A stretch of DNA of 64,000 nucleotides from Mobula hypostoma (taxonomy: Eukaryota). Below, one piece after another: positions 8,060 to 44,836 of the stretch. The DNA lies in contig NC_086105.1 in assembly GCF_963921235.1 (NCBI RefSeq), positions 126,666,001 through 126,730,000 on the forward strand, read 5' to 3'. Within the stretch, counting starts at the first letter, position 1, and each line of letters starts with the position of its first letter. The position numbers and the translations under genes were made by a program. The notes beneath the pieces are model-generated. The model saw only the letters and a program-made list of their open reading frames with translations. It did not search any database and was not told the origin of the DNA.

Positions 8060-8490
8060 CACTGTCCTCTATTACTGGATTCCTCCTCCATTAGCTCACT
8101 ACTATTTCCACTCATCTGTCCTGTCAGCTTCTCATATCATTCACTCTCCCCCCATCTTCCCCTCTCAGCTGATCTTACCTACCACCTGCCAGCTTGTAAT
8201 CCTCCCCCTCCCTTCCACCTCTCATTTTGGCCCCTGTCCCTTCCTTTTCAGTCCTGATGAAGGGCCTCAGTATGAAATGTCCCGATGAAGGGTCTCGGCC
8301 TGAAACATCAACTGTACTCTTTTTCCATAGGTGGTGCCTGGCCTGCTGAGCTCCTCCAGTATTTTGTGTACGTTCCCTGGGTTTCCAACATCTGCAGATT
8401 TTCTCTTGTTTGAAACACTGACTGTTTGCTTCCCTCCATGGATGCTGCCTGATTTGCTAAGTTCCCCCGCGGGGTGTGCGTGTGTGCAGT
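8060..8490 (+). mobile_element. Older Penelope tail fragments with a tandemly duplicated, decayed hammerhead (8249-8314)
   Basis: CAGTCCTGATGAAGGGCCTCAGTATGAAATGTC followed by CCGATGAAGGGTCTCGGCCTGAAACATCAACTG and the family tail. Confidence 0.7.
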
Positions 8491-8812
8491 TCATTGATCA
8501 CGTAGTCTGGGATTCAAGGTGACAGAAAAGTTTCTGTAAATCTGTCAAATAATTCCCAGACAACTTTGTTGGACACCTCCATCAGATGTAAACCACTGGA
8601 AACCCAAAAGCAGGGCTTCACATCATTTAAGGGCACATACACGTCTAAATTTGATGCCAAGAGCTCAGTCACATGGTCTACTAGTTCCTATATATTGTCA
8701 TAGTTGTCTTGAAACAAACAAATGACACTTTCAGCAATTGTTACAAGTTAACTATGTTGATGTGGGACTAAGCTCTTGAAGACAGGTTAGGCAAAGAATT
8801 CATCCTTTAAGA

Positions 8813-9282
8813 CAGGGGCCCTTAATTTTTTTAATGCCATGGACCACTTTGGCAGTCCAGTGAAGCTTATGGACCTTTTCTCAGAATAATGTATTTAAAT
8901 ACACAAAATAAAATACATTGGGTTACAAAAGAAACTAATTACATTGACATAACAGTTCAAAATATTTTAAAAACAAATTTGTGATGTAGTAATGTATGTG
9001 CCTCTTTATTAACGCATTAAATAACAAGTAGTGATGACTGCTGTAAACAACATTGAGATATTTGTAACAGCTGTAATGTGATATGAAAATATCTGGGAAT
9101 TCTATTGGTGACAAAGTCAAAGGTACTGCTAATATTACTGTGGTTTGTTGCCTACGTCCATAATTGAAGGAAATCCTAAATATCAGATAGAGGTTGGTAA
9201 CGTAACCTCAAGTCAATATTTTCCCATCCAAGTTCACAGACTTCCTGGAATCTATCTACAGACCCCAGGTTAAGAACCTCCA
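8813..9282. mobile_element. hAT-Charlie MITE resembling mammalian Charlie4a-type elements
   Basis: TIR-like ends CAGGGGCCCTTAA / GGTTAAGAACCTC. Internal TTTGGCAGTCCAGTGAAGCTTATGGACC..TCTCAGAATAATG and TTCCCATCCAAGTTCAC recognised from the remembered consensus. Confidence 0.7.
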
Positions 9283-10949
9283 AGATCCAATGAATTCCTT
9301 TTAATTAATATGGCAGTCTAATGATCACCAATGTTTTTTTTTCCTCTTCTATTTTCCTTAATTAGCTTTAAATCATGTTGTCATGGTGAGATTTCAACGC
9401 TGATATCCAGATCATGAGTCCAAGGTTTTGCCTTAGTCCAAAAACAATCACTAAGCTTTCATTCTAAATGTTCACTGACAATACCCACTATTTGCTACTT
9501 CACTGAACATGATCTAACTGGCCCACATTCAGTAGATCAAATAATTCTATTTAACTCCACCTCAAGCAAGGTGCTGCCTCCCTCCCCCAGACCATATGCA
9601 ATCACGCTGTAGAGTCTCAGATCTATGCCTCGATAAAGAACACCCATTTCCTATTCTAGAAATGTTCTTTTTTTTTTGCACATTTGGTCCTGAAACACAG
9701 CACTCCACTGGTTGATTTTTCTTGATCCCTTATTTAATCCCAACTCATCTAAAACTACTACCCATTTCTCAAAATGCATCAACTTACATTTACCATCGTG
9801 ATCCCTACTGGCTGACAAACTGACTCCTGGTTAATCAATTACTCAATTTCAAATTCCATGATCATGAAATCCACACTTGGCCTCCCCCCCCCCCCCCGCT
9901 CCCTGGCTCTAAAACTTCCCTGACACTGAAATTTCATGTAATCATGAAATGTCATTCCAGTATTGGTGGCATGTCTTCAACTGCCAAAGTCCTGGAATCC
10001 TTTCTAAAACTGTTCTGTGCCTGTCCCTCCTTATAATCATCTCTTTTGACCATTTTTTATTAACTACCTTAGCATTTTGAAACTCACTAGCAGTTCATTT
10101 GTGTGAACAAGTTTCTGAGTATTACTATACGAACACAGGATACTGTTGGAGTATTGTTTCTGGCGAAATAAAATCCAACCTTTAGATTCAGTTTTGGCTA
10201 TTACATTGCTACTTTAATTACTATAACAGACTAACCACTAGAATCGTCATTAACTGTAGCACAAATACATACCGTCTAATAAATCCATGTGCATTAAATG
10301 CAAGCTGTTTGTAGCATGATGTCTTCAAAATGTGCTGAAAGTAGCCAACATGACAATTACCGTACAGTACTCCTAAACAGCATACCAGCATGCATCTTAG
10401 CTGTGGTTGCATATTAAAGTGCTGATTCAACAGCTAATAATTTCACCCCATGCGAATTTGAACTAAAGGTTTCTGAAATGTGCACCCACGAAGTTAAGCC
10501 ATTACTCGACAAAAGCTGAACAAAGTTTATTCTGATTTGAATCTTCAAAGAGTAAAGAACTTACATAAGAAAATAAAGGAAAATTCATAAGTTTTATTCT
10601 GTAATTCAGTACTTTAGCTCTCCTTTCTATGAAGAAATATATCATTCCGTCATTATCTCAAAAAAAGAACAGAAGCTTCACATCTAGATGAAGTGCAAAC
10701 TGACGACATATTCAGATTGACGTCGGTTTCCACATATGGGCCTCGAGCCTTTCTGTAACAAGTTCCCCGACCAACATATGGAACGTTTCGCAAGAATATA
10801 AAAAAATATATACACACACACCTTGAGAGAATTATGCTTAAAAAACTGGCGTTGAAAGCCAACTACGTTTAAAGTAATGAGGCCTAAAGTTGACATGGGT
10901 TGCAAAACAGCTTTTTACCTTTTCTTGGTCGAGACGATTAGCCGAAGAT

Positions 10950-15100: not shown

Positions 15101-15690
15101 ACTGTTTTGCTGATGAGCAGAATGGTTATCTCCAGAATCCTAACAAGTATTTAGAGTAAAGATTTACAAGGATGTTAGCAGGATTTAGGTGACTGGGTTA
15201 TAGGGAGAGGTTAGACAGGCTGGCTCTTCGTTCATTAGAGTTCAGAAGTCAAAGCAATGATCTCATGGAGATATATAAAATCATGAGGGGCAGATTTTCC
15301 AAGATTGGGGAATCAAAATAAATAGGAACACACATAAAAATTGCCGGTGAATGCAGCAGGCTACGCAGCATCTCTAGGAAGAGGTACAGTCGATGTTTTG
15401 GGCCGAGACCCTTCGTCAGGACTAACTGAAAGAAGAGATAGTAAGAGATTTGAAAGACATGGTTTTTAGGCTGGAGGTGGCAGGGTTAACAGAAGCCTGA
15501 GGGGCAATTTTGTTACTGTATATGGAACCAACTGCTAGAGAGAGTTGTTACGCCAGGTACAATAGATTATTGAAGAAGTACGTTGGCAAGTGTATCAATG
15601 ACAAGAGTTCAGAGGGAGGTGGGCCAAGTGAGTAAGTGGATTAGCTTGAATATACGTCATGGTCAGCACAGACAAATATGGGCCAAAGGT
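12160..15690. mobile_element. Old CR1-type LINE fragments (minus ~12160-13230 and 14220-14830; plus ~15160-15690)
   Basis: Similarity to the 45352-46503 copy, e.g. GACCAGAACTGAACACAATATTTCAA and GATCTCATGGAGATATATAAAATCATGAGGGG. Confidence 0.6.
15328..15455 (-). mobile_element. Short Penelope tail with decayed hammerhead, inside a CR1 fragment
   Basis: Matches 17700-17830. Core mutated to AAAACATC on the minus strand. Confidence 0.75.
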
Positions 15691-17699: not shown

Positions 17700-18360
17700 A
17701 GCAACACACATCAAAGTTGCTGGTGAACGCAGCAGGCCAGGCAGCATCTCTAGGAAGAGGTACAGTCAACGTTTCAGGCCGAGACCCTTCGTCAGGACTA
17801 ACTGAAGGAAGAACTAATAAGAGATTTGAAAGTGGGAGGGGGAGGGGGAGATCCAAAATGATAGGAAAAGACAGGAGGGGGAGGGATGGAGGCAAGAGCT
17901 GGACAGGTGATTGGCAAAAGGGATATGAGAGGATCATGGGACAGGAGGCCCAGGGAGAAGGAAAAGGGGGGGGGTAAACCCAGAGGATGGGCAAGGGGTA
18001 TAGTCAGAGGGACAGAGGGAGAAAAAGGAGAGTGAGAGAAAGAAAGTGTGTATATAAATAACGGATGGGGTACAAGGGGGAGGTGGGGCATTAGCGGAAG
18101 TTGGAGAAGTCAATGTTCATGCCATCAGGTTGGAGCCATCCCTCCCCCTCCTGTCTTTTCCTATCATTTTGGATCTCCCCCTCCCCCTCCCACTTTAAAA
18201 TCTCTTACTAGTTCTTCCTTCAGTTAGTCCTGATGAAGGGTCTCACCCTGAAACGTCGACTGTACCTCTTCCTAGAGATGCTGCCTGGCCTGCTGCGTTC
18301 ACCAGCAACTTTGATGTGTGTTGCTTGAATTTCTAGCATCTGCAGAATTCCTCGTGTTTG
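17700..18360. mobile_element. Fold-back non-autonomous Penelope-derived insertion
   Basis: Inverted arms ~17700-17890 and ~18137-18325. 12-bp TSD AGTTGGACTACA at 17688-17699 and 18361-18372. Confidence 0.88.
18225..18262 (+). ncRNA. Minimal hammerhead ribozyme motif
   Basis: TAGTC-CTGATGA-AGGG-TCTCA-CCCT-GAAAC-GTC-GACTG. Partner copy on the minus strand at 17763-17800 has a GTT triplet. Confidence 0.75.
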
Positions 18361-18614
18361 AGTTGGACTACAGTTAAGCCAAGGTTACAAAGAAACAGGT
18401 ATAATTCAGATCAAGGTATTCTCTGGGGATTGGTTTAACCGCTAACTTCATTGAAAGATAATTTGTAAATTACAAATTGAAGCAATTTTTGACTTTTTAT
18501 ATTAGCTTCATATTCACATAGGAAATGATTCCAGTGATGATTCATCAAGGGACAGCAGATTTAATTTCAAACTAGCTATTAGAGAAAGGATTTAGTTCTT
18601 TCCTGGCATATACG

Positions 18615-21100: not shown

Positions 21101-23170
21101 TCTCAGCTCAAACTGGTAAAACTTGAGGTATAAGCATAGCCAAGCACACTCATTTGTCAATTGCCAAGAACTTTCAGACTATTCTAGTGGTGTTTAGTAT
21201 GGTGAAGAATTGCATTGATATCACTATGTAACTGTTGATGAAGTTTGTCCCTGTATCATGTCATGTCAGTCTCAGGTTCCATTACTCTGTAGTATACCTG
21301 CATTGTGAATGTGTTTACTTCTAATAACCACTCCATGCATGTCATTTTTCTCTTAACTGCTTGAGTGGTCTCAGTTGTAAGTGCACTTCTCCCCTGAGAA
21401 ACTCTTGCAGCAGTTGTAGCCTGTGGGATTGGGGGCTACTATGAGTGCTGGCAGTATCTTTTTTCGTGCTTCCCAGTGCCTGCCTGCCCATTCAGCAGTG
21501 CACCACTTGCAGATCACTTACTGTTATGCCCAGCGCTAGCTCCAGGCAGCGGCTGTATCACTATTCCAAAGACTTCTCTCCATTTCTAAAGTGAAAAGGT
21601 ATTGCTTTTAATACCTACAGCCAGGTTTTAGGTTCAGCTGCCCCTAACGTGGAGAACAGACACTGGCCGGAGCATCGCCCAATCTGCTTACAGACTTGTC
21701 TGGATATTTTATTATTATTATTATGAATTCTTTTGTATTTGCACAAATTGTTGTCCACCCTGTTGGGTGTGGTTTTTCATTTAGTTTATGATGATTATTG
21801 GATTTATAGAGTATGCCCATAAGAAATCGAATCTTAGGGTGGTATATAGTGACATATATGTACTCTGATAATAAAATCACTTTAAACTTTTGAGATTTCA
21901 ACTTTTGAAATGTAGAACGAAGTCAGAGATGGGACCATGCAGGTGTGTGAAGATGAAAAACCTATGCTTCTGTTGAACATGAAACTATCTAGCCCTGAGA
22001 GAAAAGGATAACAGGAAAAAGATCCATTATGAGTGGGAGAATGAAAAGTAGCATCACAAAAGATAATTGGACCCATTGTGCCCTATCCTATTTAGTCAAT
22101 GGTATAGGCTTGCACCCCATTTTCCCATTCCATAGCAAGCAAACTATTTAGAAAAAATAAACTAAATTGCAGTCAAATTAAGAGAAATATACTCCATTCT
22201 GTAGAGAGGTTACTATCTCACCTAAAATACAAAAGGAAGTCTAAAATTATGGACAAAATCATTTCTTAGAGATCTATGAAAGAATTGGAAGAGTTTGAAC
22301 TAATTGCTGACATCCATCTTTCATGAGGGAAGTACTTGTGTGGGAACAGTTTCATGCTTAGACATGATACCTTTCCGTGAATAAATTTATTGCAATGATT
22401 TATAAATTTGTATGTGAATAATAAATTGCAGAAGTTATGCTGTAAAGTGGTTCCCCATAGAACACTTTCAAGGAGCCAACTCCTTCAACAAAGGAAACTG
22501 GCTCAACTGAAGAAAATTGTAATTGAGATCTATTTTTAGATGAAAATGTAATTTCAGAAATTATTCTAAGTTCTGAATGTTGCTTTTAATATTTCAACCT
22601 AACTGTAATGTACTTTTCACAGAAGTAAAGTAACATTGTTTTTAAAATTGTGTTAGTTGCCTCAGAGTGTTACTGGTGAATGAATGGGTCCAGGTCACCA
22701 TTCTTTCCCAATTGACAGGTGTGCAAAACTTCCCACTAGTTTCCCAAATGAACAAGTGAAAAAATTCCACCCCCTTGAAGAAACAAATTTAATATTGTTC
22801 AATGTCTTTTGATTATGAATGTTTCATATTTTGTTTCACAGAATGAGATAGGTGTTGCCATTTATCTAAAAATAAACTAACAGAATGATATATTAATTGC
22901 AGACTGCTATATTTCAGAACAAAAAGGACCTGTATTAGTGAAGAATTTTCAGAGTGTCCCAAAAAGCTTCATTACCAATGATTTTTAGGAGGGTATTATT
23001 TTTCTGAAGTATAAAATAAGGCAACCAAGAAATCAGAAGCAGGTTTAATGTCACCGGCATATGTTATGAAATCAAACAACAGGAATTCTGCAGATGCTGG
23101 AAATTCAAGCAACACACATCAAATTTGCTGGTGAACGCAGCAGGCCAAGCAGCATCTATAGGAAGAGGCG

Positions 23171-23208
23171 CAGTCGACGTTTCAGGCCGAGACCCTTCGT
23201 CAGGACTA
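23171..23208 (-). ncRNA. Minimal type I hammerhead ribozyme motif (intact core)
   Basis: Exact reverse complement of 23492-23529. Confidence 0.8.
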
Positions 23209-23491
23209 ACTGAAGGAAGAGTGAGTAAGGGATTTGAAAGCTGGAGGGGGAGGGGGAGGGGGAGATGCAAAATGATAGGAGAAGACAGGAGGGGGAGGGA
23301 TAGAGCCGAGAGCTGGACAGGTGATAGGCAAAAGGGGATACGAGAGGATCATGGGACAGGAGGTCCGGGAAGAAAGACGGGGGGGGGGTGACATGATCCT
23401 CTCGTATCCCCTTTTGCCTATCACCTGTCCAGCTCTTGGCTCTATCCCTCCCCCTCCAGCTTTCAAATCCCTTACTCACTCTTCCTTCAGT

Positions 23492-23529
23492 TAGTCCTGA
23501 CGAAGGGTCTCGGCCTGAAACGTCGACTG
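23492..23529 (+). ncRNA. Minimal type I hammerhead ribozyme motif (intact core)
   Basis: TAGTC-CTGACGA-AGGGTCTCGGCCT-GAAAC-GTC|GACTG. Conserved CUGANGA and GAAA boxes, stem I UAGUC/GACUG, short stem II, GUC cleavage triplet (predicted cut after 23524). Confidence 0.8.
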
Positions 23530-26074
23530 CGCCTCTTCCTATAGATGCTGCTTGGCCTGCTGTGTTCACCAGCAACTTTGATGTGTGTTGTTATGAAATC
23601 TGTGGTTTTGTGGCAGCAGTACAATAAAATACATAATAAATACAATAAGAAGAATATGTTAAAAATCAATTAAATAAGTAATGCAAGAAAAAATGCAAAA
23701 AATACTGAGGAAATGTTCATGGAGGCGCCATTGTCCATTCAGATATCTGATGGCTTATGGGGAAGAAGCTGTTCCTGAAACATTGAGTATGTGTCTTCAA
23801 GATCTGTACTGCTTCCTTGATGGTGGCAATGAGAAGAGAGCATGTCCTGGATGATGGGGGGGGGGGTCCTAAAAGATGGATGCCACTTTTTTGAACATTG
23901 CATTTTGAAGGTGTCTTTGATGTTGGAGAGGCTAGTGCTCACAATGAGCTGGCTGAGTTTACAACTTTCTACAGCTTTTTCTGGTCCCATGCAGTGGCCC
24001 CTCTGTTACCGTGGAGCTGATTATTAACTTCAGCAGGAGGAAATCAGAGGTACATGACCTATGAGGTGGAGAAACTAAATTCATCAGTGTTATCATTTCA
24101 TTTGGCATGATACCTAAAATGTTGACAAGCCTCTATAGATGTGTGGTGGGGAGTATATTGACTGGCTGCATCATTGGCTGATATAGAAACAGTAAGGCCC
24201 GTGAATGAAAAGTCCTACAAAAAGTAGTGGATATGGCCCAGTCTATCACAGGTAAAGCCTTCCCTACTATTGAGCACATCTGCATGGAGTGCTGTGGCAG
24301 GAAAGCAGCATCCATCATCAGGGACTCCCACCACCCAGGTCATGCTGTCTTCTTGCTGCTGCCATCAGGAAGAAGGTATAGGAGCCTCAGCACTCACACC
24401 ACCATGTTCCAGAACAGTTATTACCCCTCAGCCATCAGTTTCCTGAACCAGTGGAGATAACTTCATTAGCCCCATCACTGAACTGTTTCCACAACCTATG
24501 GACTCACTTTCAAGGACACTTAATCTCATGTTCTTGAGATGTATTGTTTGTTTATTAAGTTTTCTTATTTTTATTTGCAGTTTGTTGTCTTTTGAAGATT
24601 GGTTGTTTGTCTATCCTGTTGGGTGTGGCCTTTCATTGATTCTATTGTGTTTCTTGGACTTACTATGAATACCCACAAGAAAACAAATTTCAGAGTTGTG
24701 TATGGTGACATATATATGCTTTGATAATAAATTTACTTTGAACTTTGAACCAGACGGTGATGCAACCACTTAGAATTCTCTCCACGGTACAACTGTAGAA
24801 ATTTGAAAATGTCTTAGGTGACTTACCAATTACCGTCAAACTCCTCATGAAATATAGCTGTTGTTGTGCCTTCTTTGTCATTGCATCAATATGCTTGGCC
24901 CAGGATAGATCTTTAGCGGCGTTGACAGCCAGGAACTTGAACTGCTCACCCTTTCCACTTCTGATCCGTTGATGAGAACTGGTGTGTGTTCCCTTGACTT
25001 ACCCTAGCTGAAGTCCACAATCAATTCCTTGGTCTCACTGACGTTGAGTACAAGAAAAAGGTTGTGGCTGTGAAAGCACTCATCCAACTGATCTATCTTG
25101 CTTCTGTATGCCTCCTTGTCACCATCTGAAGTTCCGCCAACAATAGTTGTGTTGTTGGCAAATTTATAGATGGTGTTTAAGCTGTGCCTAGCCACACAGT
25201 CATAGATGCAGAGAGAGTATAGCAGTGGGCTACGCACGTGTCCTTGAGGCGCACCAGTGTTGATTGTCAGCAAGGAGGAGATGTTATTTCCGATCCATAC
25301 AGACTGTGCTCTCCTGGTGAGAAAGTCAAGGATCTAGTTTTAGAGGGAGCTACAGACCCCCAGGTTTTGGAGTTTTTTGATTAGAACTGAGGATATGATT
25401 GTACTGAACACTGAACTGTAGTCAATAAAACAGCAGCTTGACGTAGGTAGTACTATTGTCCAGGTGATCCAAGGCCAAGTGGAGATCCGGTGTGAATTTC
25501 TTACAAAGAAGAGAAAGTGAGTGCCTATAGATTAATTAATTTAGTAATCTTCTTGATAAGTTTGTGCAAATCTGTTTAAATCAGATATCTGTCTGAATCC
25601 ATGTTTTTACTGTATCATATTCTGTATAGAATTATTTTGTTAATGTAAAAACTATAGATGTATGTATCACTTCTGTCACAAACTAAAGGATTTGTGAAAA
25701 ATATCCCAAGTTATTCCCTTCCCCATGGTATCTAAGTAGTAAAAGGCTCCTTCTTGGAATCATGAGGAAAACTTGTGAGATTACTTTCATGATACTCATT
25801 ATGAAACAGTTTCTGAAAACAATAATTTATCAGTGCATACTTAGTACCACAAAGAAAACCACTGAGAAACAATCCTGAAATACTAAGGAGGAGTTGTTTT
25901 TTCTGATCTGCACAGTCTGTGTTCTCCTGGTGAGGAAGTCAAGGATCCAGTTTCAGAGGGAGGTACAGAGGCCCAGGTTTTGGAGCTTTTTGATTAGTTC
26001 TTTTACTAATTTAAATTGCACTATCAGTACTTACTGCATGAAGCTATAACTGAGAAAATTCTTTTTGAAATCAG

Positions 26075-27680: not shown

Positions 27681-29237
27681 GGGGGGGGGGGGCATTACTA
27701 CACAATCTCTGGTCTAACTTTACTTTTTTTTTGCATAACAATACATGACAACAAGGCATCATTGTAGGGAATTAAAAACATGACATTCTGGGGATAAAAT
27801 TATAATCAGCAAAAATGCTGCAAGGTTCCAACAGGCAATTGCTTATTCTTCTTAATTCAGTGCTTGTTTGAACAGCCTTATTGTTGCAAGAGATAGTTAA
27901 CTGTGTAGTGAAATATCTGCATGAAAAATCTAATATTCTGGGCATGAAAAACAATGTGCAAAGCTGTTCTATCATTACTTCATGCAGGTTGATTTCCATT
28001 AATGGCAGGGGAATAACTATTAAAGACAAATGAGTGTGAGCAACTATTCAGCTAGCTGTCATCATCATGTGCCATGTCATTAGATGTGGGCGATCATGGT
28101 CAATGACTGGAATTGTCCTTGGCAAATTTTTCTACAGAAGTGGTTTGCCATTGCCACCTTTTTTTGCAGTATCTTTACAAGACAGGTGACCCCAGCCATT
28201 ATCAATACTCTTCAGAGATTCTCTGCCTGGCAGCAGTGGTCGCATAACTGAGACTTGTGATATGCACCAGCTGCTCAGATGACCATCCACATGCTGATCC
28301 TATGGCTTCATGTGTCCCTGATGGGTGGAGGCAGTGGCTAAGCAGGTGCTACACCTTGCCCAAGGTTGACTTGAGGGCTAGCGGAGGAAAGGAGCGCCTT
28401 ACACCTCCTTTGTTGGAGACGTAACTCCACTCCCGCCAGTAGTGTCTTGTTCAATTTGAAGATTAGAGGCCCAAACCAATGCATAATTAAACACAAATTG
28501 ACATAATTTTGCAAAATTGCCAAAATGTAAGGGATGTAAGTATCATTTGTAGGAACCTTCCATTGCCAAAAGACAATGGAAAGTTCTTATGAAAGATATA
28601 TGCATTCTGAGGTATCCAAAGATACAGTAATTCTTTTAATAAGAAGGATCCATAACTAGTTCTCTTTCACCGAGGAAACCACATTGGTGAGTAGTTGCTT
28701 GGCCTGTGACAAATAGCATTTGTTACAAAAAGCTTCTTACCTGATATTTGATTAAAATTAACAGATCTCCAGCAAAGTCTTTGGCAGAAATCAGCATGAG
28801 GTCATACCCACTGAACAGCATTTGCAAACTTGTACAGAGCTGTATGGTAACCTAAGTATCAACCAGCTAATATGTGCAGTTTCACACATATACAGTTATC
28901 TGAGGCTTGTATTCACAGTGTTCAATAACTTGAAAATTGCATGTAATATTGAGCATTAGTAACTTTCCAAATCTATTTAACATATTTACTGTGAAGGTTT
29001 ACTGTATGCCCTCCAAAGTAAGACTCTTTGAAATAAGATATATTATTTCCAGAATTTGTGTTCTGCACTGTCACTCTCTGCCCACAAAAATCTCTATGCC
29101 AGGAACTTCTCCATCTCTGATCTCAGTGGACCCATGATATCTAGTAACCATGACATGTAGACAACATGACATAATTAAGTTGACTGAACAGTTAATCACA
29201 AAATAGTCCCAAAAGGGCAAGCAAGAAAAAAAATCTC

Positions 29238-30172
29238 AAACAGGAGAAAATCTGCAGATGCTGGAAATCCAAGCAACACACACAAAATACAGGAGGAACT
29301 CAGCAGGTCAGGCAGCATCAATGGAAAAGAGTAAACAGTTGACGTTTCAGGCCGAGACCCTTCATCAGGACTGGAGAAAAAAAGATGAGGAGTCAGAGTT
29401 AGAAGGTGGGGAGGGGAGAAACACAAGATGGTGTGTGAAACTGGGAGGGGGGACGGATGAAGTAAAGGGTTGGGATGTTGATAGGTGAAAGAGATACAGG
29501 GCTGGAGAAGGGGGATCTAATAGGAGAGAACTGAAGACCATGGAAGAAAGAAAAGAGGGAGGAGCACCAGCAGGAGGTGATGGACAGGTAAGGAGATAAG
29601 GTGAAAGAGGGAAAAGGGGATGGGGAATGGTGAGGGGGAGGGAGCATTACCAGAAGTTTGAGAAATTGATGTCAATGCCATCAGGTTGGAGTCTATCCAA
29701 ACGGAATATAAGGTTGTTGCTCCTCCAACCTGAATGTGGCTCATCGCGACAGTAGAGGAGGCCATGGACAGTCATGTCAGAATAGGAATGGGAAGTGAAA
29801 TTAAAATGGGTAGCCACTGGGAGATCCGGACTTTTTCTGGCAGACGGAGCATAGGTGCTTAGCAAAGCGGTCTCTCAATCTACGTTGGGTCTCACCAATA
29901 TACAAGAGGCCACACTGGGAGCATCGGATACAGTAGATAACCCCAACAGACCCTCAGGTGAAGTGTTGCCTCACCTGGACAGACTTTTTAGGGCTCTGAA
30001 TAGTAGTGAGGGAGGAGGTGTAGGGGCAGGTGTTACACTTATTACATTTGCAAGGGTAATTGCCAGGAGGGAAATCAGTGGGGAGGGACGAATGGACAAG
30101 GGGATCCCTGCAGAAAACAGAAAGTGGTGGGGGGGAGGGAAAGATGCGCTTGGTGGTGGGATCCTGGTGGAG
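29238..30172 (-). mobile_element. Penelope-like element 3' fragment (GIY-YIG C-terminus + tail)
   Basis: Translates to DLPVATHFN..SHSYSDM and LIFRLDRLQPDGIDINFSNF, homologous to 40379-40840. Hammerhead motif at 29336-29373. Confidence 0.85.
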
Positions 30173-30257
30173 ATGACAATAAAGGTAAAAACATCTAAAA
30201 TAGAAGTATATTCTGGTTTAAGGGTGCTGTTGAAGAATAATGATGACTTGCTGGTAG

Positions 30258-32299: not shown

Positions 32300-34600
32300 C
32301 ATGATGTATTGGTGTCAGTTTACTACTGTCACACATACCAAAATACATTGAAAAATTCAGTCTTACAAAGTGTTCACACACAGTACATTGAGGTAGAACA
32401 AGTTAAAACAATAACAATGCAGAATAATGTGTAAAAGCTATAAGAGAAAGTGCAGTGCAGATAAACAATAAAATGCAAGATCATAACATGGTAGCTTGTG
32501 AAATCAAGAGTCCTTCTTATCATACAAGAAGTTAATTCAAGAGTCTGCTAACAGAGGGATGGAAACTGTCATTGAGCCTCGTGTTACGTGCCTTCAGGCT
32601 TCTGTATCTAATGCCCAATGGGAGAGGGAATAGCAAATGTAGCTGAAGGAAGTGCAATACATACACAGTCCATAGAGAGGGAGCCTGGTTTCCGTGATGT
32701 GCTGAGCTGTGTCCACAACTCTCCGCAGTTTCTTGCAATCACACGCAGAGCATTCCTTTACTAAATCATTCTGCCAAAGTCAAGGTGGTCAAAGTAAAAC
32801 TTATTTTCAAAGTATGTATATGTTACTACATACTACCTTGGCATTCATTTTCTTGCAGACATTTACACACAAAAAAGAAATAGAATAGAATCTACGAAAC
32901 GCTGCACATAAAAAAGACTGACAAGCAATGTGCAAAAGAAGATAAATTGTGCAAATAAAACAATAATAATAATACTCAGAACATGAGTTGTAGTGTCTTT
33001 GAAAGTGAGTCTGTAGGTTGCAGAATCAAATCAGAGTTGTGCTAAGAATGAAGTTATCCACACTGGTTCAAGAACCTGATGATTGTAGGGTAACAGTTGT
33101 TTTTGAATCAGGTGGTGTGAGACCCAAGACTTCTGTACATCCTACCCCTTAGGAGGTAATAGTGAGAGAAGAGCATGGCTTGGATGGTAGGGGTTCTTGA
33201 CGAAAAGCAGGGGTTCTGCTTTTTTGTGGCAGTGATCCATGTATATGTGCTCATTGGTGGGAAGGACTTTAGCTGTGATGGACTGGGCTGTATCCACTGT
33301 TTTCTGCAGCCCGTTCCAGTCCTGGGCATTGGTGTTTCCATACCAGGCCATGATGCAACCAATTGGGATACAATCCATTATGCATCTATGGAAGTTTGTC
33401 AAAGTTTTTGGTGATATATCCAAACTTTGAAGAGAGTAGAGGTGCTATCATGCTTTCTTTGTGATGGCATTGATGTGCTGTTCCCAGGACAGATCCTCTT
33501 GATATGATGATGCCAAGGAATTTAAAATTCTGCACCTCTGATCCCCTAATGAGGACTGGTTCATGGATTTCTGGCTTCTTCTTTCCTTAGTCAATAATTA
33601 GCTCAGTCCTGATGAAGGGTCTCGGCCTGAAACGTTGTCTGTACTCTTTTCCATAGATGCTGCCTGGCCTGTTGAGTTCCTCCAGCATTTTGTGTGTGTT
33701 GCTTGGATTTCCAGCATCTGCAGATTTTCTCTTGTTTGTAATCAGCTCTTTGGTTTTGCTGATGTTGAGTGAGAAGTTGTTGTTTTGGCACCATTCAACC
33801 AGATTTTTCAATCTCCCTTCTATAAGCCAATTCATCACCACCTTTGATTTGGCTAACAACGGTGGTATCATCAACAAACTGGTATATGGCAATGGAATTG
33901 CACTTAGCCAAACAATCATAAGTATAAAGTGAGCTAATCACAGAGTATTGTGGTGTACCTGTGATGGCGATTGTGGAAAAGATGTTGCCAATCTGTAATG
34001 ACGAGGGTATGTAAGTGAGGAAATTGAGGATCCAGTTGCACAGGGAGGTATAGAGGACCTGGAGCTAGGGGATGACAATGTTGAATGCTGAGCAGTAGTC
34101 AATGAAGAGCATCCTGATGGATGCACCCAGGTGTTCCAGAGCTGAGTGAAGAGCATTGAAATGGAATCCGCTATTGATCTGTTGTGACAGTAGGCACATT
34201 GGTGCAGATCCAGGTGATTCCTCAGGCAGGAGTTGATGTGCTTCATGACCAGCCTCTCAAAGCACTTCTTCACGGTGGGTGTAAGTGCTACTGGACAATA
34301 GTCATTGATAGCATTATAATAGATTGATTCATCCAGACAGAATGCTTTCTATGGTGCATCGATAAAAATTTTTAAGTGTTGATGGGGACATGACAAATTC
34401 CTTTAGCCTCCTGAGGAAGTAGAGGTGTTGGTGAACTGTTACGGCCATGGCATCAACATTGTTGGACCAAGAAAGACTATTATCAATGTTCAATTGTATT
34501 CTTGAAACATAACCTAGGAAACTGAATTTGTCAAAGCTCTCAACCTCAATAGTGTTGATGTAGACAGGAGCATGTGCACCATGCTGAATGACCTGCAGTT
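32300..34600 (-). mobile_element. Run of degenerate Rex1/Babar LINE fragments
   Basis: KCFERLVMKHINSCL, NNFSLNISKTKELI, HLYFLRRLKEF, RYRSLKARNTRLNDSF. Confidence 0.8.
33605..33738 (+). mobile_element. 134-bp Penelope tail unit (hammerhead + 3' end) inserted in a Rex/Babar LINE
   Basis: Begins AGTCCTGATGAAGGG, ends CAGCATCTGCAGATTTTCTCTTGTTTG. Imperfect TSD TAATTAGCTC / TAATCAGCTC. Confidence 0.8.
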
Positions 34601-39083: not shown

Positions 39084-41292
39084 AACACACATAAAATGCT
39101 GGTGGAACGGAGCAGGCCAGACAGTATCCATAGGAAGAAGCACAGTCGACATTTCGGGCCAAGACCCTTTGTCAGGACTAACTGAAAGAAGAGATAGGAA
39201 GAGATTTGAAAGTGGGAGGGGGAGGGGGAGATCTGAAATGATAGGAGAAAACAAGAGGAAGAGGGATAGAGCTAAGAGCTGGAAAGTTGATTGGCAAAAG
39301 GGATACAAGGCTGGAGAAGGGAGAGGATCATGGGACGGGAGGCCTAGGGAGAAAGAAAGGGGGAGGGGAGCACCAGAGGAAGATGAATAGCAAGCAAGGA
39401 GTAATTGTGAGAGGGACAGACAGAGAGAAAAGGAAAAAAATAAAAACTAATAAATAAATAAATAAGGGATGGGGTAAGAACCCCTTGCTCAATCCCTTCC
39501 CACCTATGTTCGTGACACTTCTCACAAAGCTCTCCGCTTCTTTTTGGATTCCAGACCAAACCAGTTCCCCTTTACCACCGCTCTCCTCCGTCTAGCAGAA
39601 TTAGTCCTTACTCTTAATAATTTCTCCTTTGGTTCCTCCCACTTCCTCCAAACTAAAGGTGTAGCAATGGGCACCCATATGGGTCCCAGCTATGCCTGCC
39701 TTTTTGTTGGTTCTGTGGAACAGTCCATGTTCCAAGCCTATACTTGTATCCGTCCCCCACTTTTCCTTCGCTACATCGACGACTGCATTGGCGTTGCTTC
39801 CTGCACACATGCGGAGCTCATTGACTTTATTAACTTTACTTCCAACTTTAACCCTGCCCTCAAATTTACCTGGTCCATTTCCGACACTTCCCTCCCCTTT
39901 CTTGATCTTTCTGTCTCTATCTCTGGAGACAGCTTATCTACTGATGTCTACTGTAAGCCTATGGATTCTCACAGCTACCTGGACTATTCCTCATCCCACC
40001 CTGTCTCTTGCAAAAATACCATCCCCTTCTCGCATTCCTCTGTCTCTGCCGCATCTGCTCTCAGAATGAGGCCTTTCATTCCAGGATGAAGGAGATGTCT
40101 TCCTTTTTTAAAGAAAGGAGCTTCCCCTCCTCCACCATCAACTCTGCTCTTAAATGCATCTCTCCCATTTCACGCACATCTGTTCTCACCCCATCCTCCC
40201 ACCACCCCACTAGGGATAGGGTTCCCCTTGTCCTCACCTACCACCCCACCAGCCTCCAGGTCCAACATATAATTCTTCGTAACTTCCGCCACCTCCAACG
40301 GGATCCCACCACCAAGCACATCTTTCCCTTCCCCCCTTCTTTCTGCTTTCTGCAAGGATTGCTCCGTACACGACTCCCTTGCCCATTCGTCCCCCCCCAT
40401 CCCTTCCCACCAATCTCCCTCCCAGCATTTATCCTTGTAAGTGGAACAAGTGCTACACATGCCATTTCACTTCCTCCCTCACCACCATTCAGGGCCCCAG
40501 ACAGTCCTTCCAGGTGAGGCGACACTTCATCTGTGAGTCGGCTGGGGTGATAAACTGTGTCCGGTGCTCCCGGTGCGGCCTTCTATATATTGGTGAGACC
40601 CGATGCAGACTGGGAGACCATTTCGCTGAACACTTACATTCTGTCCGCCAGAGAAAGCAGGATCTCCCAGTGGCCACACATTTTAATTCCACGTCCCATT
40701 CCCATTCTGATATGTCTATCCATGGCCTCCTCTACTGTCAAGATGAAGCCACACTCAGGTTGGAGGAACAACACCTTATATTCCGTCTGGGTAGCCTCCA
40801 ACCTGATGGCATGAACATTGACTTCTCCAACTTCCGCTAATGCCCCTCCTCCTGTTCTTACCCCACCCTTTATTTATTTATCTATCTCTTTCTTTATTTA
40901 TTTTTTTCCCTTTTTTCTCTCTCTCTGTCCCTCTCACAATTACTCCTTGCCTGCTCTCCATCTCCCACTGGCGCTCCCCTCCCCCTTTCTTTCTCCCGAG
41001 GCCTCCCATCCCATGATCCTCTCCCTTCTCCAGCCTTGTATCCCTTTTGCCAATCAACTTTCCAGCTCTTAGCTCCATCCCTCCCCCTCCTGTCTTCTCC
41101 TATCATTTTGGATCTCCCCCTCCCCCTCCCACTTTCAAATCCCTTACTATCTCTTCTTTCAGTTAGTCCTGACGAAGGGTCTTGGCCCGAAACGTCAACT
41201 GTGCTTCTTCCTGTGGATGCTGTCTGGCCTGCTGCATTCCACCAGCATTTTGTGTGTGTTGCTTGAATTTCCAGCATCTGCAGATTTCCTCT
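39084..41292 (+). mobile_element. Penelope-like retroelement, 5'-truncated (RT C-terminal half + GIY-YIG endonuclease, frameshifted), with an inverted copy of its 3' end at the 5' side
   Basis: RT motifs QTKGVAMGTHMGPSYACLF and FLRYIDD; GIY-YIG region CSRCGLLYIGETRCRLGDHFAEH. 39084-39480 is the reverse complement of ~40855-41260. 14-bp TSD TATATATTGAAGGT at 39070-39083 and 41293-41306. Confidence 0.92.
41164..41201 (+). ncRNA. Hammerhead motif in the 3' region of the ORF-bearing Penelope copy (sense to the ORF)
   Basis: TAGTC-CTGACGA-AGGGTCTTGGCCC-GAAAC-GTC-AACTG, with one stem I mismatch. Confidence 0.7.
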
Positions 41293-42406: not shown

Positions 42407-42787
42407 CCTTGTCGTGGTGGAGAAGCTTGTGTGGTCCTGTGATCCCGAGAGCGATGCCGTCTGGAGCTATGCTCCTGGTAGTGTCACCCATGGCGGTAAG
42501 GTCGAGGGTGAGGTCCCTGACAAAGAACAATCTAACCAAAACCTCAACAGTGGAACAGGCGGATGAAGTTACGGCGGATGAAGGCTGTAACAGATCCATC
42601 AGCTCCAATCGTCATGGTTTCCATGCCATTGGAATCAGCCGGTTGATTTGTAAAGTATCATGTGCTTCCTGGAATGCAACATCAAATACACGTTAAACAA
42701 GTACACACACAGGCATCTTTGCTCTGTGGGCCACTTCTTCAAAACGAAGACCATCATCCTCGACCTCGAGGGATAGCCACAATGACG
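42407..42787 (+). mobile_element. Short insertion in Pao gag resembling an RTE-clade 5' UTR-derived element
   Basis: Interrupts gag homology. CCTTGTCGTGGTGGAGAAGCTTGTGTG...GAGCTATGC...CACCCATGGCGGTAAGGTC recalls RTE/Expander 5' ends (recognition from memory). Confidence 0.4.
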
Positions 42788-43642
42788 AAAGAGAGATCAG
42801 TGGTTGTAAACTGCTGACATTTTTGATTTTATTGAAAGGCACGTAAAGATTGCTACAGACTCAGTATTTGGGAATTGATAGGGTGTTTCATCATCTGCAA
42901 TTAGCAAAGGTGTGAACAAAACTAAGTCACAGCTATGTTCTGAGCTAAAGAAGTAGCTTTGCTACTACTATGGCTATTGCGAGAAGTAAAGCTAAAATTG
43001 AACCTCGAACCTATGGAAGGGAAATGGTTTTCTCAGCCAAAGGGGTTTGTCTGTTTTGTGAGGGAGAACACACATTGGATTTGTGCCCTCAGCTGGAAAA
43101 AAAGGTCTTGTAGTGAGAAGATTGCCTTCCTAAAAGAAAATAATGTCTGCTTAGGCTGTTTGCATACAGGACACATCAGCAAGAATTGCAGGTGGTGTCA
43201 TGCAAGGTATCTGGTGCAAGCATCCCAGCATACTTTCTGATGAAGAGGGTGCAGAGTCAAAACAAGCCATGAAAGAATCAGACACAACAGTGAGTAGTGC
43301 CTTGGTATCCAATGGCCTTACAGGGGCTGGCAATCATGATGGTAAACTTCCCATAATTCTAGTACAAGTGAAGTCTAAAAAGGGTAACAAGACAGAGTTA
43401 CTATGCTTACCTAGATGAAGGGAGTACCAGAGTGTTCTGCATAGCAGGTCTCATGAACATGCTCAACTTTACAAGAAAATAGATACAGTACTCATTCCCT
43501 TACGCATTATGGACAAGGCAAGAGAAGGTCGTGAGTAGCTACATTGTTTTAGGATTGGAAGTGGTTAGCTTAGGTAGAAAAAACTCTTGTGAGCTACTTA
43601 TCATCTATACACAGGAAAGTATACCTGTCCACAGAGGGAACT

Positions 43643-43799
43643 GTAAACACAAAATAATCTGCAGACGCTGGGATCAAAGCAACACTCACAGCAGGCTGGA
43701 GGAACTCAGCAGGTCGGGCAGCATCAGTGGAAACGTCGACTCATCGTTTCCACTGATGCTGCCCGACCTGCTGAGTTCCTCCAACGTGCTGTGAGTGTT
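43643..43799. mobile_element. Miniature Penelope-tail fold-back with 55-bp arms
   Basis: Arms 43681-43735 and 43745-43799 with ~2 mismatches and a 9-nt loop. TSD CCACAGAGGGAACT at 43629-43642 and 43800-43813. Confidence 0.85.
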
Positions 43800-44796
43800 C
43801 CACAGAGGGAACTTCTGTGTCAGGGGAATCTCTAGGGATGGTCTCACTTGAAACATGTCCACTTGCAAGAGATTGATTCAGAAATTGAACTGCTGATAGG
43901 TACAAATGTGCCTAAAGCAATGGAGCCATTGAAATGAATCGCAGTGTCAGTAATGGACCTTATGCAATCAGAACAATGTTGGTCTGGACTGTGAATGGAC
44001 CACTGAAAGGAGACAATGGTGATGGGAGAGACTGTGCACAGCTGAGCTGACAGTTAACAGGATCTCAGTTTTGAACTTGGATGGCTTTGGTAGCGACAGT
44101 TCAAGGCAGACTTCCCTGGTTTGTCAAGAGAAGACCACAGGTTAATAGAGCTGGTTATGAATTCTGCAAAACTGGCAAACTACCAGATTTGGTTAACATC
44201 CCAAGTAACAGGAAGATTACAAAACAGCATGCTCTAAATCTAAGGAAGAGGTTTAAGAAGGATTTGTCATTTCACACTGACTATATAGCTTTCATGAAGG
44301 ATGTCATCTACAAAGGTTATGCCAAAGGAGTTCTTGCAGAAGGTCTGAAATGCAGTGACGAGAATGTCTGGTATATTCCACATCATGGCGTTTATCACCC
44401 TAGAAAAGGGAAACTTTGTGTTGTGCTTGACCACAGAGTAACTTTTCAGGGAATATCACTTAATGCTCAACTTATACAGGGACAAAATATGACTAGCTCA
44501 CTGATTGGAGTCATAACCAGATTCAGAAAAGGATCAGTGGTGATCATGGCAGATATTGAATCAATGTTTCACCAGGTTTAAGTACCAGCGGGAGATACAG
44601 ATCTGCTGAGGTTTTCCTGGTAGTCGGATGGTGACCTCAGTCAAGACATGGTGATACATCTCTTTGCAGCAACTTCATCACTAAGCTGTGAAAACTTTGC
44701 TCTTAGGAAATGTGCAGAAGACAATGAAGAACAGTGTAACACACATAAAAAATGCTGGTGAACGCAGCAAGCCAGCCAGCATTTATAGGAAGAGGT

Positions 44797-44836
44797 ACAG
44801 TCGACGTTTCGGGCCGAGACCCTTCGTCAGGACTGT
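44797..44836 (-). ncRNA. Minimal type I hammerhead ribozyme motif (closest to consensus)
   Basis: Minus strand ACAGTC-CTGACGA-A-GGG-TCTCGG-CCC-GAAAC-GTC|GACTGT, with a 6-bp stem I. Part of a ~100-bp Penelope tail (44738-44836) inside the Pao RT. Confidence 0.8.

What the first reader, a model, noticed from the sequence alone, without database searches (positions are those of the whole stretch)
8249..44836. Dispersed family of obligate-dimer minimal hammerhead ribozymes carried by Penelope-like elements
Seen: about 11 copies of NAGTC-CTGAYGA-AGGGTCTCGGCCY-GAAAC-GTC-GACTG at 8249(+), 15387(-), 17763(-), 18225(+), 23171(-), 23492(+), 29336(-), 33604(+), 39143(-), 41164(+) and 44797(-). At least four (18225, 23171, 23492, 44797) keep the whole catalytic core and stem I. 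Established: CUGANGA/GAAA/NUH is the hammerhead core, and Penelope-like elements are known to carry minimal type I hammerheads that work as dimers. Inference: here stem III is reduced to the palindrome ACGU with no loop (GAA-ACGU-C), so a monomer cannot fold and cleavage would need two copies in tandem or in trans. At roughly one copy per 6 kb in this window, the genome could hold a very large pool of latent self-cleaving sites, including in introns. I cannot tell whether this family has been described.
Basis: partly seen in the sequence, partly recalled or inferred. Interest (0 to 1): 0.85.

Follow-up and report, generated by a model that had tools for sequence, protein, structure and literature searches.

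The report
Penelope retrotransposon ends carrying minimal hammerheads
The repeated motif is real: it is the already-described minimal hammerhead ribozyme motif in the terminal repeat of Penelope-like retrotransposons, here an extremely abundant family in what looks like a ray genome, so it is an ordinary member of a known kind and no cutting could be shown.

Summary
Observation confirmed. The window holds 12 copies of the motif, against 0 expected by chance.

Five copies pass a full minimal-hammerhead descriptor: 17768, 18230, 23176, 23497 and 44803. Chance gives 0.003 per window.

The motif has every sequence feature of the min-HHR described for Penelope-like elements (PLEs) by Cervera and de la Pena 2014:
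- an unpaired base after A9;
- a G10.1-C/U11.1 pair;
- a short helix I;
- no helix III loop, with a palindromic ACGU in its place.

The carrier is a PLE. Remnants of a reverse transcriptase (YIDD), a CX4CxxC linker and a GIY-YIG endonuclease lie about 330 nt upstream of two copies. Four insertions are inverted pairs with 12-15 bp target-site duplications. A tail of about 38 nt sits on only one arm of each pair.

Public contigs suggest very roughly 1e5-1e6 copies per genome in several related species.

There is no direct evidence of cleavage. No compensatory covariation was seen, no Rfam hit was found, and no read-level data were available. CpG sites in the core decay like other CpG sites. Four of the five intact copies sit in long hairpins that would sequester them.

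This scan has noted the same family in many other windows of this genome. Verdict: interpretation supported, kind already known, low interest.

The parts
8250..8314 (+). Degenerate hammerhead motif with an internal 28-nt tandem duplication. The cores are at 8254-8281 and 8282-8309. It has U4>C, a broken helix II in unit 1, and AUGU / ACAU in place of ACGU.
15387..15423 (-). Degenerate hammerhead motif (G12>A, ACAU). It lies in a 5'-truncated copy at 15324-15456 that has no tail.
17763..17799 (-). Intact min-HHR (cleavage triplet GUU), on the left arm of an inverted-pair insertion.
18226..18262 (+). Intact min-HHR with a helix II variant (GGG/CCC register), on the right arm of the same insertion.
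17700..18360 (.). One PLE insertion event made of two head-to-head 5'-truncated copies. The minus arm (about 17700-18135) has no tail; the plus arm (18136-18360) has the tail. It is flanked by the 12-bp TSD AGTTGGACTACA at 17688-17699 and 18361-18372.
23171..23207 (-). Intact min-HHR, on the left arm (the arm with the tail).
23493..23529 (+). Intact min-HHR, on the right arm (the arm without the tail). The predicted cut is after C at 23524.
23074..23588 (.). One inverted-pair PLE insertion, flanked by the 12-bp TSD TGTTATGAAATC at 23062-23073 and 23589-23600. As RNA it folds into a near-perfect long hairpin (-427 kcal/mol, z = -36) that pairs each HHR with its antisense copy.
29336..29372 (-). 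Hammerhead motif with an intact core (CUGAUGA) but G1.1>A next to the cleavage site. It belongs to subfamily B.
29235..30175 (-). 3' part of a PLE, subfamily B, with the tail. It is 71.5% alike over about 1 kb to 40290-41291. It holds the endonuclease C-terminal remnant ORF 29647-29865 (-), which ends ..FSNFW.
33605..33641 (+). Hammerhead motif with an intact core (triplet GUU) and one internal helix I mismatch.
33604..33738 (+). Solo insertion of about 135 bp. It begins exactly at helix I ((C)AGTC) and ends with the tail. It is flanked by a 10-bp TSD with one mismatch: TAATTAGCTC on the left and TAATCAGCTC on the right.
39143..39179 (-). Degenerate hammerhead motif (G8>A, AUGU), in the inverted 5' arm of the PLE insertion.
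39084..41292 (.). One PLE insertion with three parts: an inverted 5'-truncated copy (39084-39481, minus, no tail); a 5'-truncated, frameshifted RT-EN body (plus); and the 3' terminal repeat (40854-41292, plus, with tail). The arms are 89.9% alike. It is flanked by the 14-bp TSD TATATATTGAAGGT at 39070-39083 and 41293-41306.
39544..40089 (+). Reverse transcriptase remnant, with motif C in FLRYIDDCIG.
   Evidence: RVT_1, E 0.0044, below the Pfam cutoff; (nearest Atlas clusters carry RVT_1 + HTH_animal + GIY-YIG, score 0.98)
40379..40840 (+). C-terminal endonuclease remnant. It has a CX4CxxC linker (CKWNKCYTC), then GIY-YIG (GVINCV..CGLLYIGET), and ends FSNFR-stop, 328 nt upstream of the hammerhead core (CTGA at 41169).
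   Evidence: Pfam and PDB sequence searches were negative.
41165..41201 (+). Hammerhead motif in the 3' terminal repeat of that PLE. The core is intact, position 11.1 is C, and G1.1>A.
44798..44834 (-). Intact min-HHR with a 6-bp helix I and a G10.1-C11.1 pair. It is a solo short copy (about 44737-44840, no tail) and the only intact copy outside an inverted pair.
43643..43798 (.). A 156-bp inverted-pair insertion of the same family that lacks the CUGANGA half of the ribozyme. The longer arm starts within about 3 nt of the predicted cleavage site. It is flanked by the 15-bp TSD TCCACAGAGGGAACT at 43628-43642 and 43799-43813.
23074..23110 (-). An example of the optional tail of about 35-38 nt at the 3' end of the element. 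It is present in 6 of the 11 aligned copies and on exactly one arm of each of the three HHR-bearing inverted pairs; the HHR-less pair at 43643-43798 shows the same one-sided pattern.
   Evidence: Searches show two discrete genome-wide 3' ends, at 23073/4 and 23108-10.

Best explanation
These are copies of the 3' terminal repeat (pLTR) of an endonuclease-bearing Penelope-like retrotransposon. Judged by its CX4CxxC linker it is of the Neptune/Nematis type. The host is a cartilaginous fish, probably a ray.

Each copy carries the minimal type I hammerhead motif that is characteristic of metazoan PLEs. Reading 5' to 3', the motif is:
- helix I 5' strand, (Y)AGUC;
- core CUGAYGA;
- an unpaired A;
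- helix II, GGGU-CUCG-GCCY;
- GAA;
- ACGU;
- C17, with the predicted cut after it;
- helix I 3' strand, GACUG.

Shown here:
- the motif matches the descriptor;
- it lies about 280-330 nt downstream of the RT/GIY-YIG ORF and 100-135 nt upstream of the element's end;
- the insertions have PLE architecture (5' truncation, head-to-head inverted copies within one TSD, a one-sided tail);
- the family is very abundant and is present in RNA-derived contigs.

Inferred from published work on other PLE hammerheads, and not shown here: one copy cannot form helix III. Two copies pair through ACGU to build a shared 4-bp helix III and cut after C17. This is inefficient unless the copies are in tandem on one RNA or are helped by the element's protein.

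The genomic copies in this window are dead-on-arrival relics that decay neutrally. Most of the intact ones are locked in long inverted-repeat hairpins.
For: The feature-by-feature match to the published min-HHR rests (PMC4209133) compared. The matched features are the bulge after A9, G10.1-C11.1, the palindromic 15.2-16.2 pair, the 4-5 bp helix I, and dual motifs on opposite strands 100-700 bp apart.

The PLE protein remnants are supported as follows:
- YIDD RT piece, CX4CxxC linker and GIY-YIG;
- Atlas neighbours carrying PF01541 GIY-YIG and RVT_1 + HTH_animal at scores 0.96-0.98;
- 25 homologues, including stingray proteins.

The PLE insertion hallmarks listed by Craig et al. 2021 (PMC8557442) and Frangieh et al. 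2024 (PMC11167929) are all seen:
- four inverted pairs, each within a 12-15 bp TSD;
- a tail of about 38 nt on only one arm;
- two discrete 3' ends about 35 nt apart with A/T-rich flanks across thousands of contigs.

Between subfamilies A and B the alignable block begins exactly at helix I. The hammerhead is its best-conserved part (loose ends at 23207).
Against: - No Rfam hammerhead model matches at any threshold. This is expected, because the models require a helix III hairpin.
- No compensatory covariation is seen among the 11 copies. Cells are 85% paired, with 0 double changes and only two wobble-compatible one-sided changes.
- The predicted MFE of a single copy is a plain hairpin in which GACG of the core pairs with CGUC. 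An inactive fold is therefore favoured.
- CpG sites inside the core vary at 7-11% in genomic contigs, like other CpG sites.
- The RNA/DNA depth ratio changes 20-30 nt downstream of the predicted cut, not at it.
- Only assembled contigs were available, not reads, so ends at the cut site could not be examined.
- Pfam itself did not call GIY-YIG on the degraded ORF.
Confidence: 0.85

Rival explanations
1. The conserved 37-nt block is a cis-acting hairpin of the PLE 3' region. It would be bound by the RT/EN or needed for RNA stability or priming. On this reading its hammerhead likeness is vestigial or 'parasitic', and no cleavage matters to the element or the host.
For: - The MFE fold of every intact copy is a simple hairpin that pairs core nucleotides.
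- The roughly 100 nt downstream is nearly as conserved as the motif.
- In the anole PLE, ribozyme mutants did not affect insertion in vitro, and no RNA-seq reads ended at the cut site (PMC11167929).
- Craig et al. note that PLE clades without hammerheads proliferate well.
Against: - All 14 core positions, the bulge, the 10.1-11.1 pair and the palindrome are kept in the exact hammerhead register. The same architecture recurs in PLEs across metazoa with unrelated stem sequences.
- Plant, fungal and protist PLEs carry fully active hammerheads at the same place.
- The anole motif does cleave when the protein is present, with C3/G8 rescue.
Confidence: 0.1
2. Most copies are not randomly 5'-truncated PLEs. 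They would be a discrete short non-autonomous unit of about 105-140 nt, made of the hammerhead plus the PLE 3' end, retrozyme- or SINE-like and mobilised in trans. Its 5' end would be defined at helix I.
For: - The copy at 33604-33738 starts exactly at (C)AGTC and has a 10-bp TSD with 1 mismatch.
- The copy at 44803 starts no more than 5 nt before AGTC.
- Among genome-wide contigs, 23207 (the start of helix I) is one of the largest classes of loose ends. Its flank agreement (0.39-0.46) is as low as at the true 3' end.
- Rare head-to-tail joints are seen in the contigs.
Against: - Other subfamilies diverge just upstream of helix I, which also produces loose ends at 23207. The loose-end consensus there resembles the sequence upstream of helix I in subfamily B.
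- Other copies start 33 to over 400 nt upstream.
- There are no tandem arrays in the window.
- Only one clean TSD case was found here.
Confidence: 0.15
3. The match to the hammerhead consensus is a chance resemblance inside an ordinary repeat.
For: The copies descend from one or a few ancestral sequences, so the 12 copies are not independent trials.
Against: The descriptor matches 0.003 times per 64-kb window by chance, and nothing else in the window matches it. The motif sits exactly where PLE hammerheads are known to sit.
Confidence: 0.01

Closest known systems
Minimal hammerhead ribozymes (min-HHR) of metazoan Penelope-like elements (Cervera and de la Pena 2014, PMC4209133; Lunse, Weinberg and Breaker, RNA Biol 14:1499, cited in PMC6765202)
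   Same: - A type I motif with the CUGANGA and GAAA boxes and a U-H cleavage site.
- An unpaired base between positions 9 and 10.1, and a G10.1-C11.1 pair.
- A helix I of 4-6 bp.
- No helix III loop, with a palindromic 15.2/16.2 pair, hence the dimer model.
- A location in the PLE terminal repeat.
- Mostly solo or opposite-strand pairs from truncated insertions, and thousands of copies per genome.
   Different: - Helix II here is only 4 bp (GGGU/GCCY with a CUCG loop). The Schistosoma families have 7-8 bp.
- The apparent copy number is much higher than the 4,000-9,000 reported for coelacanth and Xenopus. My estimate is rough.
- I found no paper that describes this particular family or a cartilaginous-fish example in detail.
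Poseidon element PAc of Anolis carolinensis (Frangieh et al. 2024, PMC11167929)
   Same: Both are EN+ PLEs with a hammerhead motif. Both have two adjacent reverse-transcription start sites that give an optional tail of 30-40 bp. Both insert into AT-rich targets.
   Different: In PAc the hammerhead overlaps the start of the ORF. Here it lies about 330 nt after the ORF stop and 100-135 nt before the element's end. The linker here has the extra CX4CxxC motif of the Neptune/Nematis clades.
Non-LTR retrozymes of animals (Cervera and de la Pena 2020, PMC7229834; Li et al. 2026 preprint, 10.64898/2026.07.22.740005)
   Same: Both carry dimer-dependent type I hammerheads in vertebrates. Both are related to PLE terminal repeats and are non-autonomous derivatives of them. 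One Chondrichthyes species was reported to have them.
   Different: Retrozymes are tandem arrays of 150-450 bp units that give circular RNAs. Their hammerheads keep a short helix III with a loop. In this window there are no tandem arrays, only dispersed truncated or inverted copies.

Membership tests
Hammerhead ribozyme, PLE minimal type I variant | Core boxes CUGANGA and GAAA, and a cleavage triplet N-U-H, at the correct spacing | tested here: met
   Eight of 12 copies keep all the boxes, and 5 pass the whole descriptor.
Hammerhead ribozyme, PLE minimal type I variant | Helix I (4-6 bp) and helix II closed by a loop, with an unpaired base after A9 and a G10.1-C11.1 pair | tested here: met
   Helix I is 5-6 bp. 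Helix II is GGGU/GCCY. The bulged A is invariant. The 10.1-11.1 pair is G-U in 6 and G-C in 4 of the 10 distinct sequences (11 copies).
Hammerhead ribozyme, PLE minimal type I variant | No helix III hairpin, with positions 15.1-16.1 forming a palindrome that allows a shared intermolecular helix III | tested here: met
   ACGU is present in 8 of the 12 copies. The variants are CpG products, ACAU or AUGU.
Hammerhead ribozyme, PLE minimal type I variant | Stems supported by compensatory changes | tested here: inconclusive
   There are 0 pairs with changes on both sides, and the copies are too alike to tell. Cells are 85% paired, against 15-51% when the partners are slid.
Hammerhead ribozyme, PLE minimal type I variant | Site-specific self-cleavage after H17 that leaves 5'-OH and 2',3'-cyclic phosphate ends | not testable with these tools
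   Only assembled contigs of public runs were available. No table of molecule ends could be made.
Rfam hammerhead families (Hammerhead_1, _3, _II, HH9, HH10) | A score at or above the family's gathering threshold | tested here: not met
   There is no hammerhead hit at the gathering threshold or at E up to 10. These models include a helix III hairpin, which this variant lacks.
Penelope-like element, EN+ (Neptune/Nematis type) | A single ORF with a reverse transcriptase followed by a C-terminal GIY-YIG endonuclease | tested here: met
   - The RT piece has YIDD (RVT_1 E 0.0044, below cutoff).
- The EN piece has the GVI..YIGET motif.
- Atlas neighbours carry PF01541 and RVT_1 + HTH_animal at 0.96-0.98.
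- Pfam and PDB sequence searches on the degraded EN piece were negative.
- The ORF is frameshifted and 5'-truncated.
Penelope-like element, EN+ (Neptune/Nematis type) | A CX2-5CxxC zinc-finger-like linker between the RT and the EN | tested here: met
   CKWNKCYTC is present in ORF 40379-40840 and is conserved as CxxxxCYTC in homologues. The definition comes from PMC8557442.
Penelope-like element, EN+ (Neptune/Nematis type) | Insertion architecture: strong 5' truncation, an adjacent inverted 5'-truncated copy, and a 30-40 bp tail at only one end | tested here: met
   Four inverted pairs each lie within one 12-15 bp TSD. The tail is on exactly one arm in all of them.
Penelope-like element, EN+ (Neptune/Nematis type) | Partial direct tandems forming pLTR-ORF-pLTR | tested here: not met
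   No direct tandem is present in this window. Only rare head-to-tail joints appear among genome-wide contigs. The literature calls this feature frequent, not obligatory.
Non-LTR retrozyme | Tandem arrays of short units, each with a type I hammerhead | tested here: not met
   The copies are dispersed or inverted. The only tandem is a 28-nt duplication inside one degenerate motif.

The most novel reading that the evidence does not exclude
This ray-like genome may carry the densest load of hammerhead motifs known in a vertebrate, at roughly one per 5-6 kb and perhaps 1e5-1e6 copies, of which about 40% are intact. Part of that load may come from a discrete 'ribozyme-first' non-autonomous unit whose 5' end is set exactly at helix I. 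If so, the motif or the splice-acceptor-like sequence just before it would have a role in defining the mobile RNA.
Probability: 0.12. Interest if true: 0.5.

Novelty: new member of a known kind. Interest (0 to 1): 0.2.

Why it matters
It matters little for new biology. The motif class, its place in Penelope-like elements and the dimer model were published in 2014-2017 and have been reviewed since.

The value here is mainly annotation. These motifs and their inverted-pair hairpins should be masked as PLE ends and not reported again as new ribozymes or microRNA-like hairpins.

The family could still be useful material for open questions about PLE hammerheads, because it is so abundant and has many TSD-bounded young insertions in several related species. 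Those questions are:
- whether the motifs cut in vivo;
- whether cleaved RNAs are ever reverse transcribed;
- why the 5' ends cluster at helix I.

Tried and rejected
- **Rfam.** Searches at the gathering threshold and at E up to 10 gave no hammerhead hit. The only hits were sub-threshold plant-microRNA models, caused by the inverted-repeat hairpin.
- **RNAcofold of two copies.** It predicts a domain-swapped extended duplex through the GGCC palindrome of helix II, as for any pair of hairpins. This says nothing about the hammerhead dimer.
- **Covariation on the window's copies.** No double changes were seen, so the test is uninformative.
- **More copies for covariation.** A metagenome scan with a pattern that left the stems free found 0 loci. 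Fetching the stingray loci of two homologous proteins gave no DNA.
- **Pfam and PDB sequence searches on the EN and RT pieces.** These were negative or below cutoff. The Atlas feature search was used instead.
- **Looking for cleavage in public RNA runs.** All runs are kept as contigs, so molecule ends are not available. The RNA/DNA depth ratio drops from about 0.13 to about 0.06 at 23143-23155, which is 20-30 nt downstream of the predicted cut and is confounded by the mix of subfamilies. It was rejected as evidence of cleavage.
- **Core conservation among genomic copies.** CpG sites in the core vary at 7-11%, like other CpG sites. Non-CpG core sites are below 4%, like most flank sites, so the test does not discriminate. 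The variant table may have been capped at 25 rows.
- **An ORF starting at the AUG inside CUGAUGA, as in the anole element.** This was rejected, because the frames close within 15-32 codons and subfamily A has CUGACGA.
- **The RT ORF at 45291-45812.** It is unrelated to the PLE RT and is not part of the 44803 copy.

Full report
**Observation**

The pattern CTGAYGA-N13-GAAACGTC with up to three mismatches hits 13 places against 2.07 expected. Twelve of them belong to one family. The longer 26-mer hits 11 places against 0.00 expected. The twelfth copy is a 28-nt duplicate of the core at 8254-8281, directly in front of the copy at 8282.

I wrote a descriptor for the minimal hammerhead. It requires CUGANGA, an optional bulge, a helix II of at least 3 bp, GAAA, a complementary 15.2/16.2 pair, U-H, and a helix I of at least 4 bp. 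Run on both strands, it finds five complete motifs: 17768-, 18230+, 23176-, 23497+ and 44803-. It finds nothing else in the window. The chance rate is 0.003 per window.

The other copies carry changes, many of them CpG transitions: G1.1>A, G8>A, G12>A, and ACGU to ACAU or AUGU. One carries U4>C.

**What the repeat is**

A self-comparison shows that the shared module starts about 4 nt before CUGA. It ends either about 100 nt or about 135 nt after the motif. The extra stretch of about 38 nt is present in 6 of the 11 aligned copies.

Two copies continue upstream into degraded coding sequence.
- Upstream of 41169+ lie an RT piece with FLRYIDDCIG (39544-40089) and a C-terminal piece (40379-40840). 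The C-terminal piece has CKWNKCYTC followed by GVINCV..CGLLYIGET, and ends 328 nt before the hammerhead core at 41169.
- Upstream of 29341- lies the matching C-terminal end (29647-29865).

Database support for these pieces is mixed.
- Pfam gives only a sub-threshold RVT_1 hit and no GIY-YIG hit on these broken pieces.
- PDB sequences give nothing.
- The Atlas feature search places the EN piece next to clusters carrying PF01541 GIY-YIG (score 0.96, about 200 of 256 features shared). It places the RT piece next to clusters carrying RVT_1, HTH_animal and GIY-YIG (score 0.98).
- A protein search finds 25 homologues. They conserve the CxxxxCYTC and VVY..YIGET motifs, and two are proteins annotated in stingrays.

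RT plus a C-terminal GIY-YIG is the defining architecture of EN+ Penelope-like elements. The CX2-5CxxC linker is the mark of the Neptune and Nematis clades (PMC8557442).

**Insertion architecture**

Four insertions are head-to-head inverted pairs, each bounded by one target-site duplication:

| Insertion | TSD length |
|---|---|
| 17700-18360 | 12 bp |
| 23074-23588 | 12 bp |
| 39084-41292 | 14 bp |
| 43643-43798 | 15 bp |

In every pair the tail is on one arm only. This matches the description of PLE insertions by Craig et al. 2021: a high degree of 5' truncation, an inverted 5'-truncated copy at the 5' end, and a 30-40 bp tail often present at only one end. It also matches the two adjacent reverse-transcription start sites shown for the anole element (PMC11167929).

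Contigs of public runs laid on one arm show the same two discrete 3' ends, at 23073/4 and 23108-10. Both have A/T-rich flanks, in hundreds of independent contigs from two species.

**Comparison with the known motif**

Cervera and de la Pena 2014 defined the min-HHR as a type I hammerhead with no helix III or loop 3 at all. They found it in the terminal repeats of all the PLEs they examined. The recurrent features they list are:
- a conserved G10.1-C11.1 pair;
- palindromic 15.2-16.2 positions;
- a short helix I;
- mostly single motifs, or pairs on opposite strands 100-700 bp apart.

They reported no cleavage by single motifs and weak cleavage by dimeric and trimeric constructs. A later review repeats the dimer model and cites Lunse, Weinberg and Breaker for the experimental demonstration. 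I could not read that paper itself.

Every listed sequence feature is present here. I found no paper that describes this particular family. A 2026 preprint reports PLEs and hammerhead retrozymes in one cartilaginous fish without giving details.

**How it would work, and how far that is shown**

Position, sequence and context are shown. The mechanism is inferred from published work on other PLEs. In that model two copies pair through ACGU to form a shared 4-bp helix III, and each core then cuts after C17.

Several observations argue that the genomic copies in this window are mostly inert.
- A lone copy is predicted to fold as a hairpin that pairs GACG of the core with CGUC.
- A 4-bp duplex is, by my own nearest-neighbour estimate, only marginally stable (about -1 to -2 kcal/mol; not a tool result). 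Dimerisation in trans should therefore need tandem copies or protein. In the anole element, cleavage was seen only with the protein present.
- Four of the five intact motifs lie in inverted-pair insertions. As RNA, 23074-23588 folds into one long hairpin of -427 kcal/mol, in which each motif is paired with its antisense copy.
- In genomic contigs the CpG sites of the core vary at 7-11% each, like other CpG sites.

There is no compensatory covariation among the window's copies and no Rfam hit. Read-level RNA ends were not available.

The positive evidence for constraint has two parts. The alignable block between the two subfamilies begins exactly at helix I. The 37-nt motif is the best-conserved part of that block.

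**Abundance**

One 171-nt arm recruits about 78,000 and 57,000 distinct DNA contigs in two organisms, and 5,000-7,000 contigs in RNA-derived runs. Near-identical words occur in runs of more than ten coded organisms.

Summed word depth over the motif is about 13 million, against about 7-18 for contigs that look single-copy. That would mean very roughly 1e5-1e6 copies. The tool warns that summed depth is not a copy number, so this is an order-of-magnitude guess only. It agrees with the window's density of one copy per 5.3 kb. It also agrees with earlier notes of this scan, which report about ten copies per 64 kb in other windows. For comparison, the axolotl genome was reported to hold 126,247 type I motifs (PMC7229834).

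**Open points**

- One solo copy (33604-33738) begins exactly at helix I and has a 10-bp TSD with one mismatch. The start of helix I is also a major class of loose ends genome-wide, with flank agreement as low as at true element ends. This may reflect a discrete short non-autonomous unit, or only the divergence of subfamilies upstream of the motif.
- The sequence just upstream of helix I looks like a 3' splice site in both subfamilies: a CTTAC or CTGAC, then a pyrimidine tract, then CAG. In Drosophila virilis Penelope, the known intron ends at the 5' end of helix I. I could not test splicing.

**Verdict**

This is a new member of a well-known kind, of low interest apart from its abundance.

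Noticed in passing
window 43628-43813: A 156-bp insertion of the same family with a perfect 15-bp TSD (TCCACAGAGGGAACT). It is made of two inverted arms that lack the CUGANGA half of the ribozyme. The longer arm begins within about 3 nt of the predicted cleavage site (..GTC|GACT..). A coincidental complement (GGAAACG / CGTTTCC) makes the exact junction ambiguous.
   Followed up: partly
window 33594-33748: A solo insertion of about 135 bp begins exactly at helix I ((C)AGTC) and ends with the tail. It is bounded by TAATTAGCTC / TAATCAGCTC. Together with the loose-end peak at the start of helix I in genome-wide contigs, this hints at a discrete 'ribozyme-first' short unit.
   Followed up: partly
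window, 20-40 nt upstream of each motif (e.g. 23208-23245 minus strand, 29373-29400 minus strand, 8225-8249 plus strand): Both subfamilies have a sequence like a 3' splice site ending at or in helix I: a branch-point-like CTTAC or CTGAC, then a pyrimidine tract, then CAG. In Drosophila virilis Penelope the known intron ends at the 5' end of helix I (PMC4209133). Splicing was not tested.
   Followed up: no
window 8254-8309; Logan contigs laid on 23065-23235: A 28-nt tandem duplication lies inside the motif at 8254/8282. Its two decayed helix III strands, AUGU and ACAU, are complementary to each other, as expected from CpG decay of a palindrome. Several rare, independent 'goes back about 26-45' joints occur at the motif in genomic contigs of two species, so short tandem duplications of the motif recur.
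   Followed up: partly
window 23065-23235: In two organisms the ratio of RNA-run to DNA-run summed depth is about twice as high over the 3' 70 nt of the module as over the hammerhead and the 20 nt after the cut site. The step lies at about 23143-23155. This is unexplained. It may reflect the subfamily mix or a more highly expressed class that lacks the hammerhead.
   Followed up: partly
window 23269-23483: The inverted-pair insertion scores up to 103 bits (below threshold) against plant microRNA precursor models in Rfam, only because it is a long hairpin. This is a likely source of false microRNA calls in this genome.
   Followed up: yes
proteins P0023, P0025: Two annotated stingray proteins contain a stretch 82-88% identical to the PLE endonuclease remnant. 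They are an ATP synthase subunit C3-like isoform in Hypanus sabinus and a VKORC1-like isoform in Hemitrygon akajei. This is probably exonised or mis-annotated PLE sequence.
   Followed up: no
window 45291-45812 (+) and 26117-26680 (-): These are other retroelement remnants unrelated to the PLE. One is an RVT_1 ORF (E 1e-10) with no similarity to the PLE RT. The other is an ORF that hits Pfam ALKBH8_N (E 2e-10).
   Followed up: partly
window 49672-49893 and 57612-57648: Further pieces of the same module without a hammerhead are present. They include a piece of about 35 nt that is tail only, and another inverted pair (49725-49806 minus, 49821-49893 plus). The family therefore has about 16-17 pieces in the window.
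   Followed up: partly
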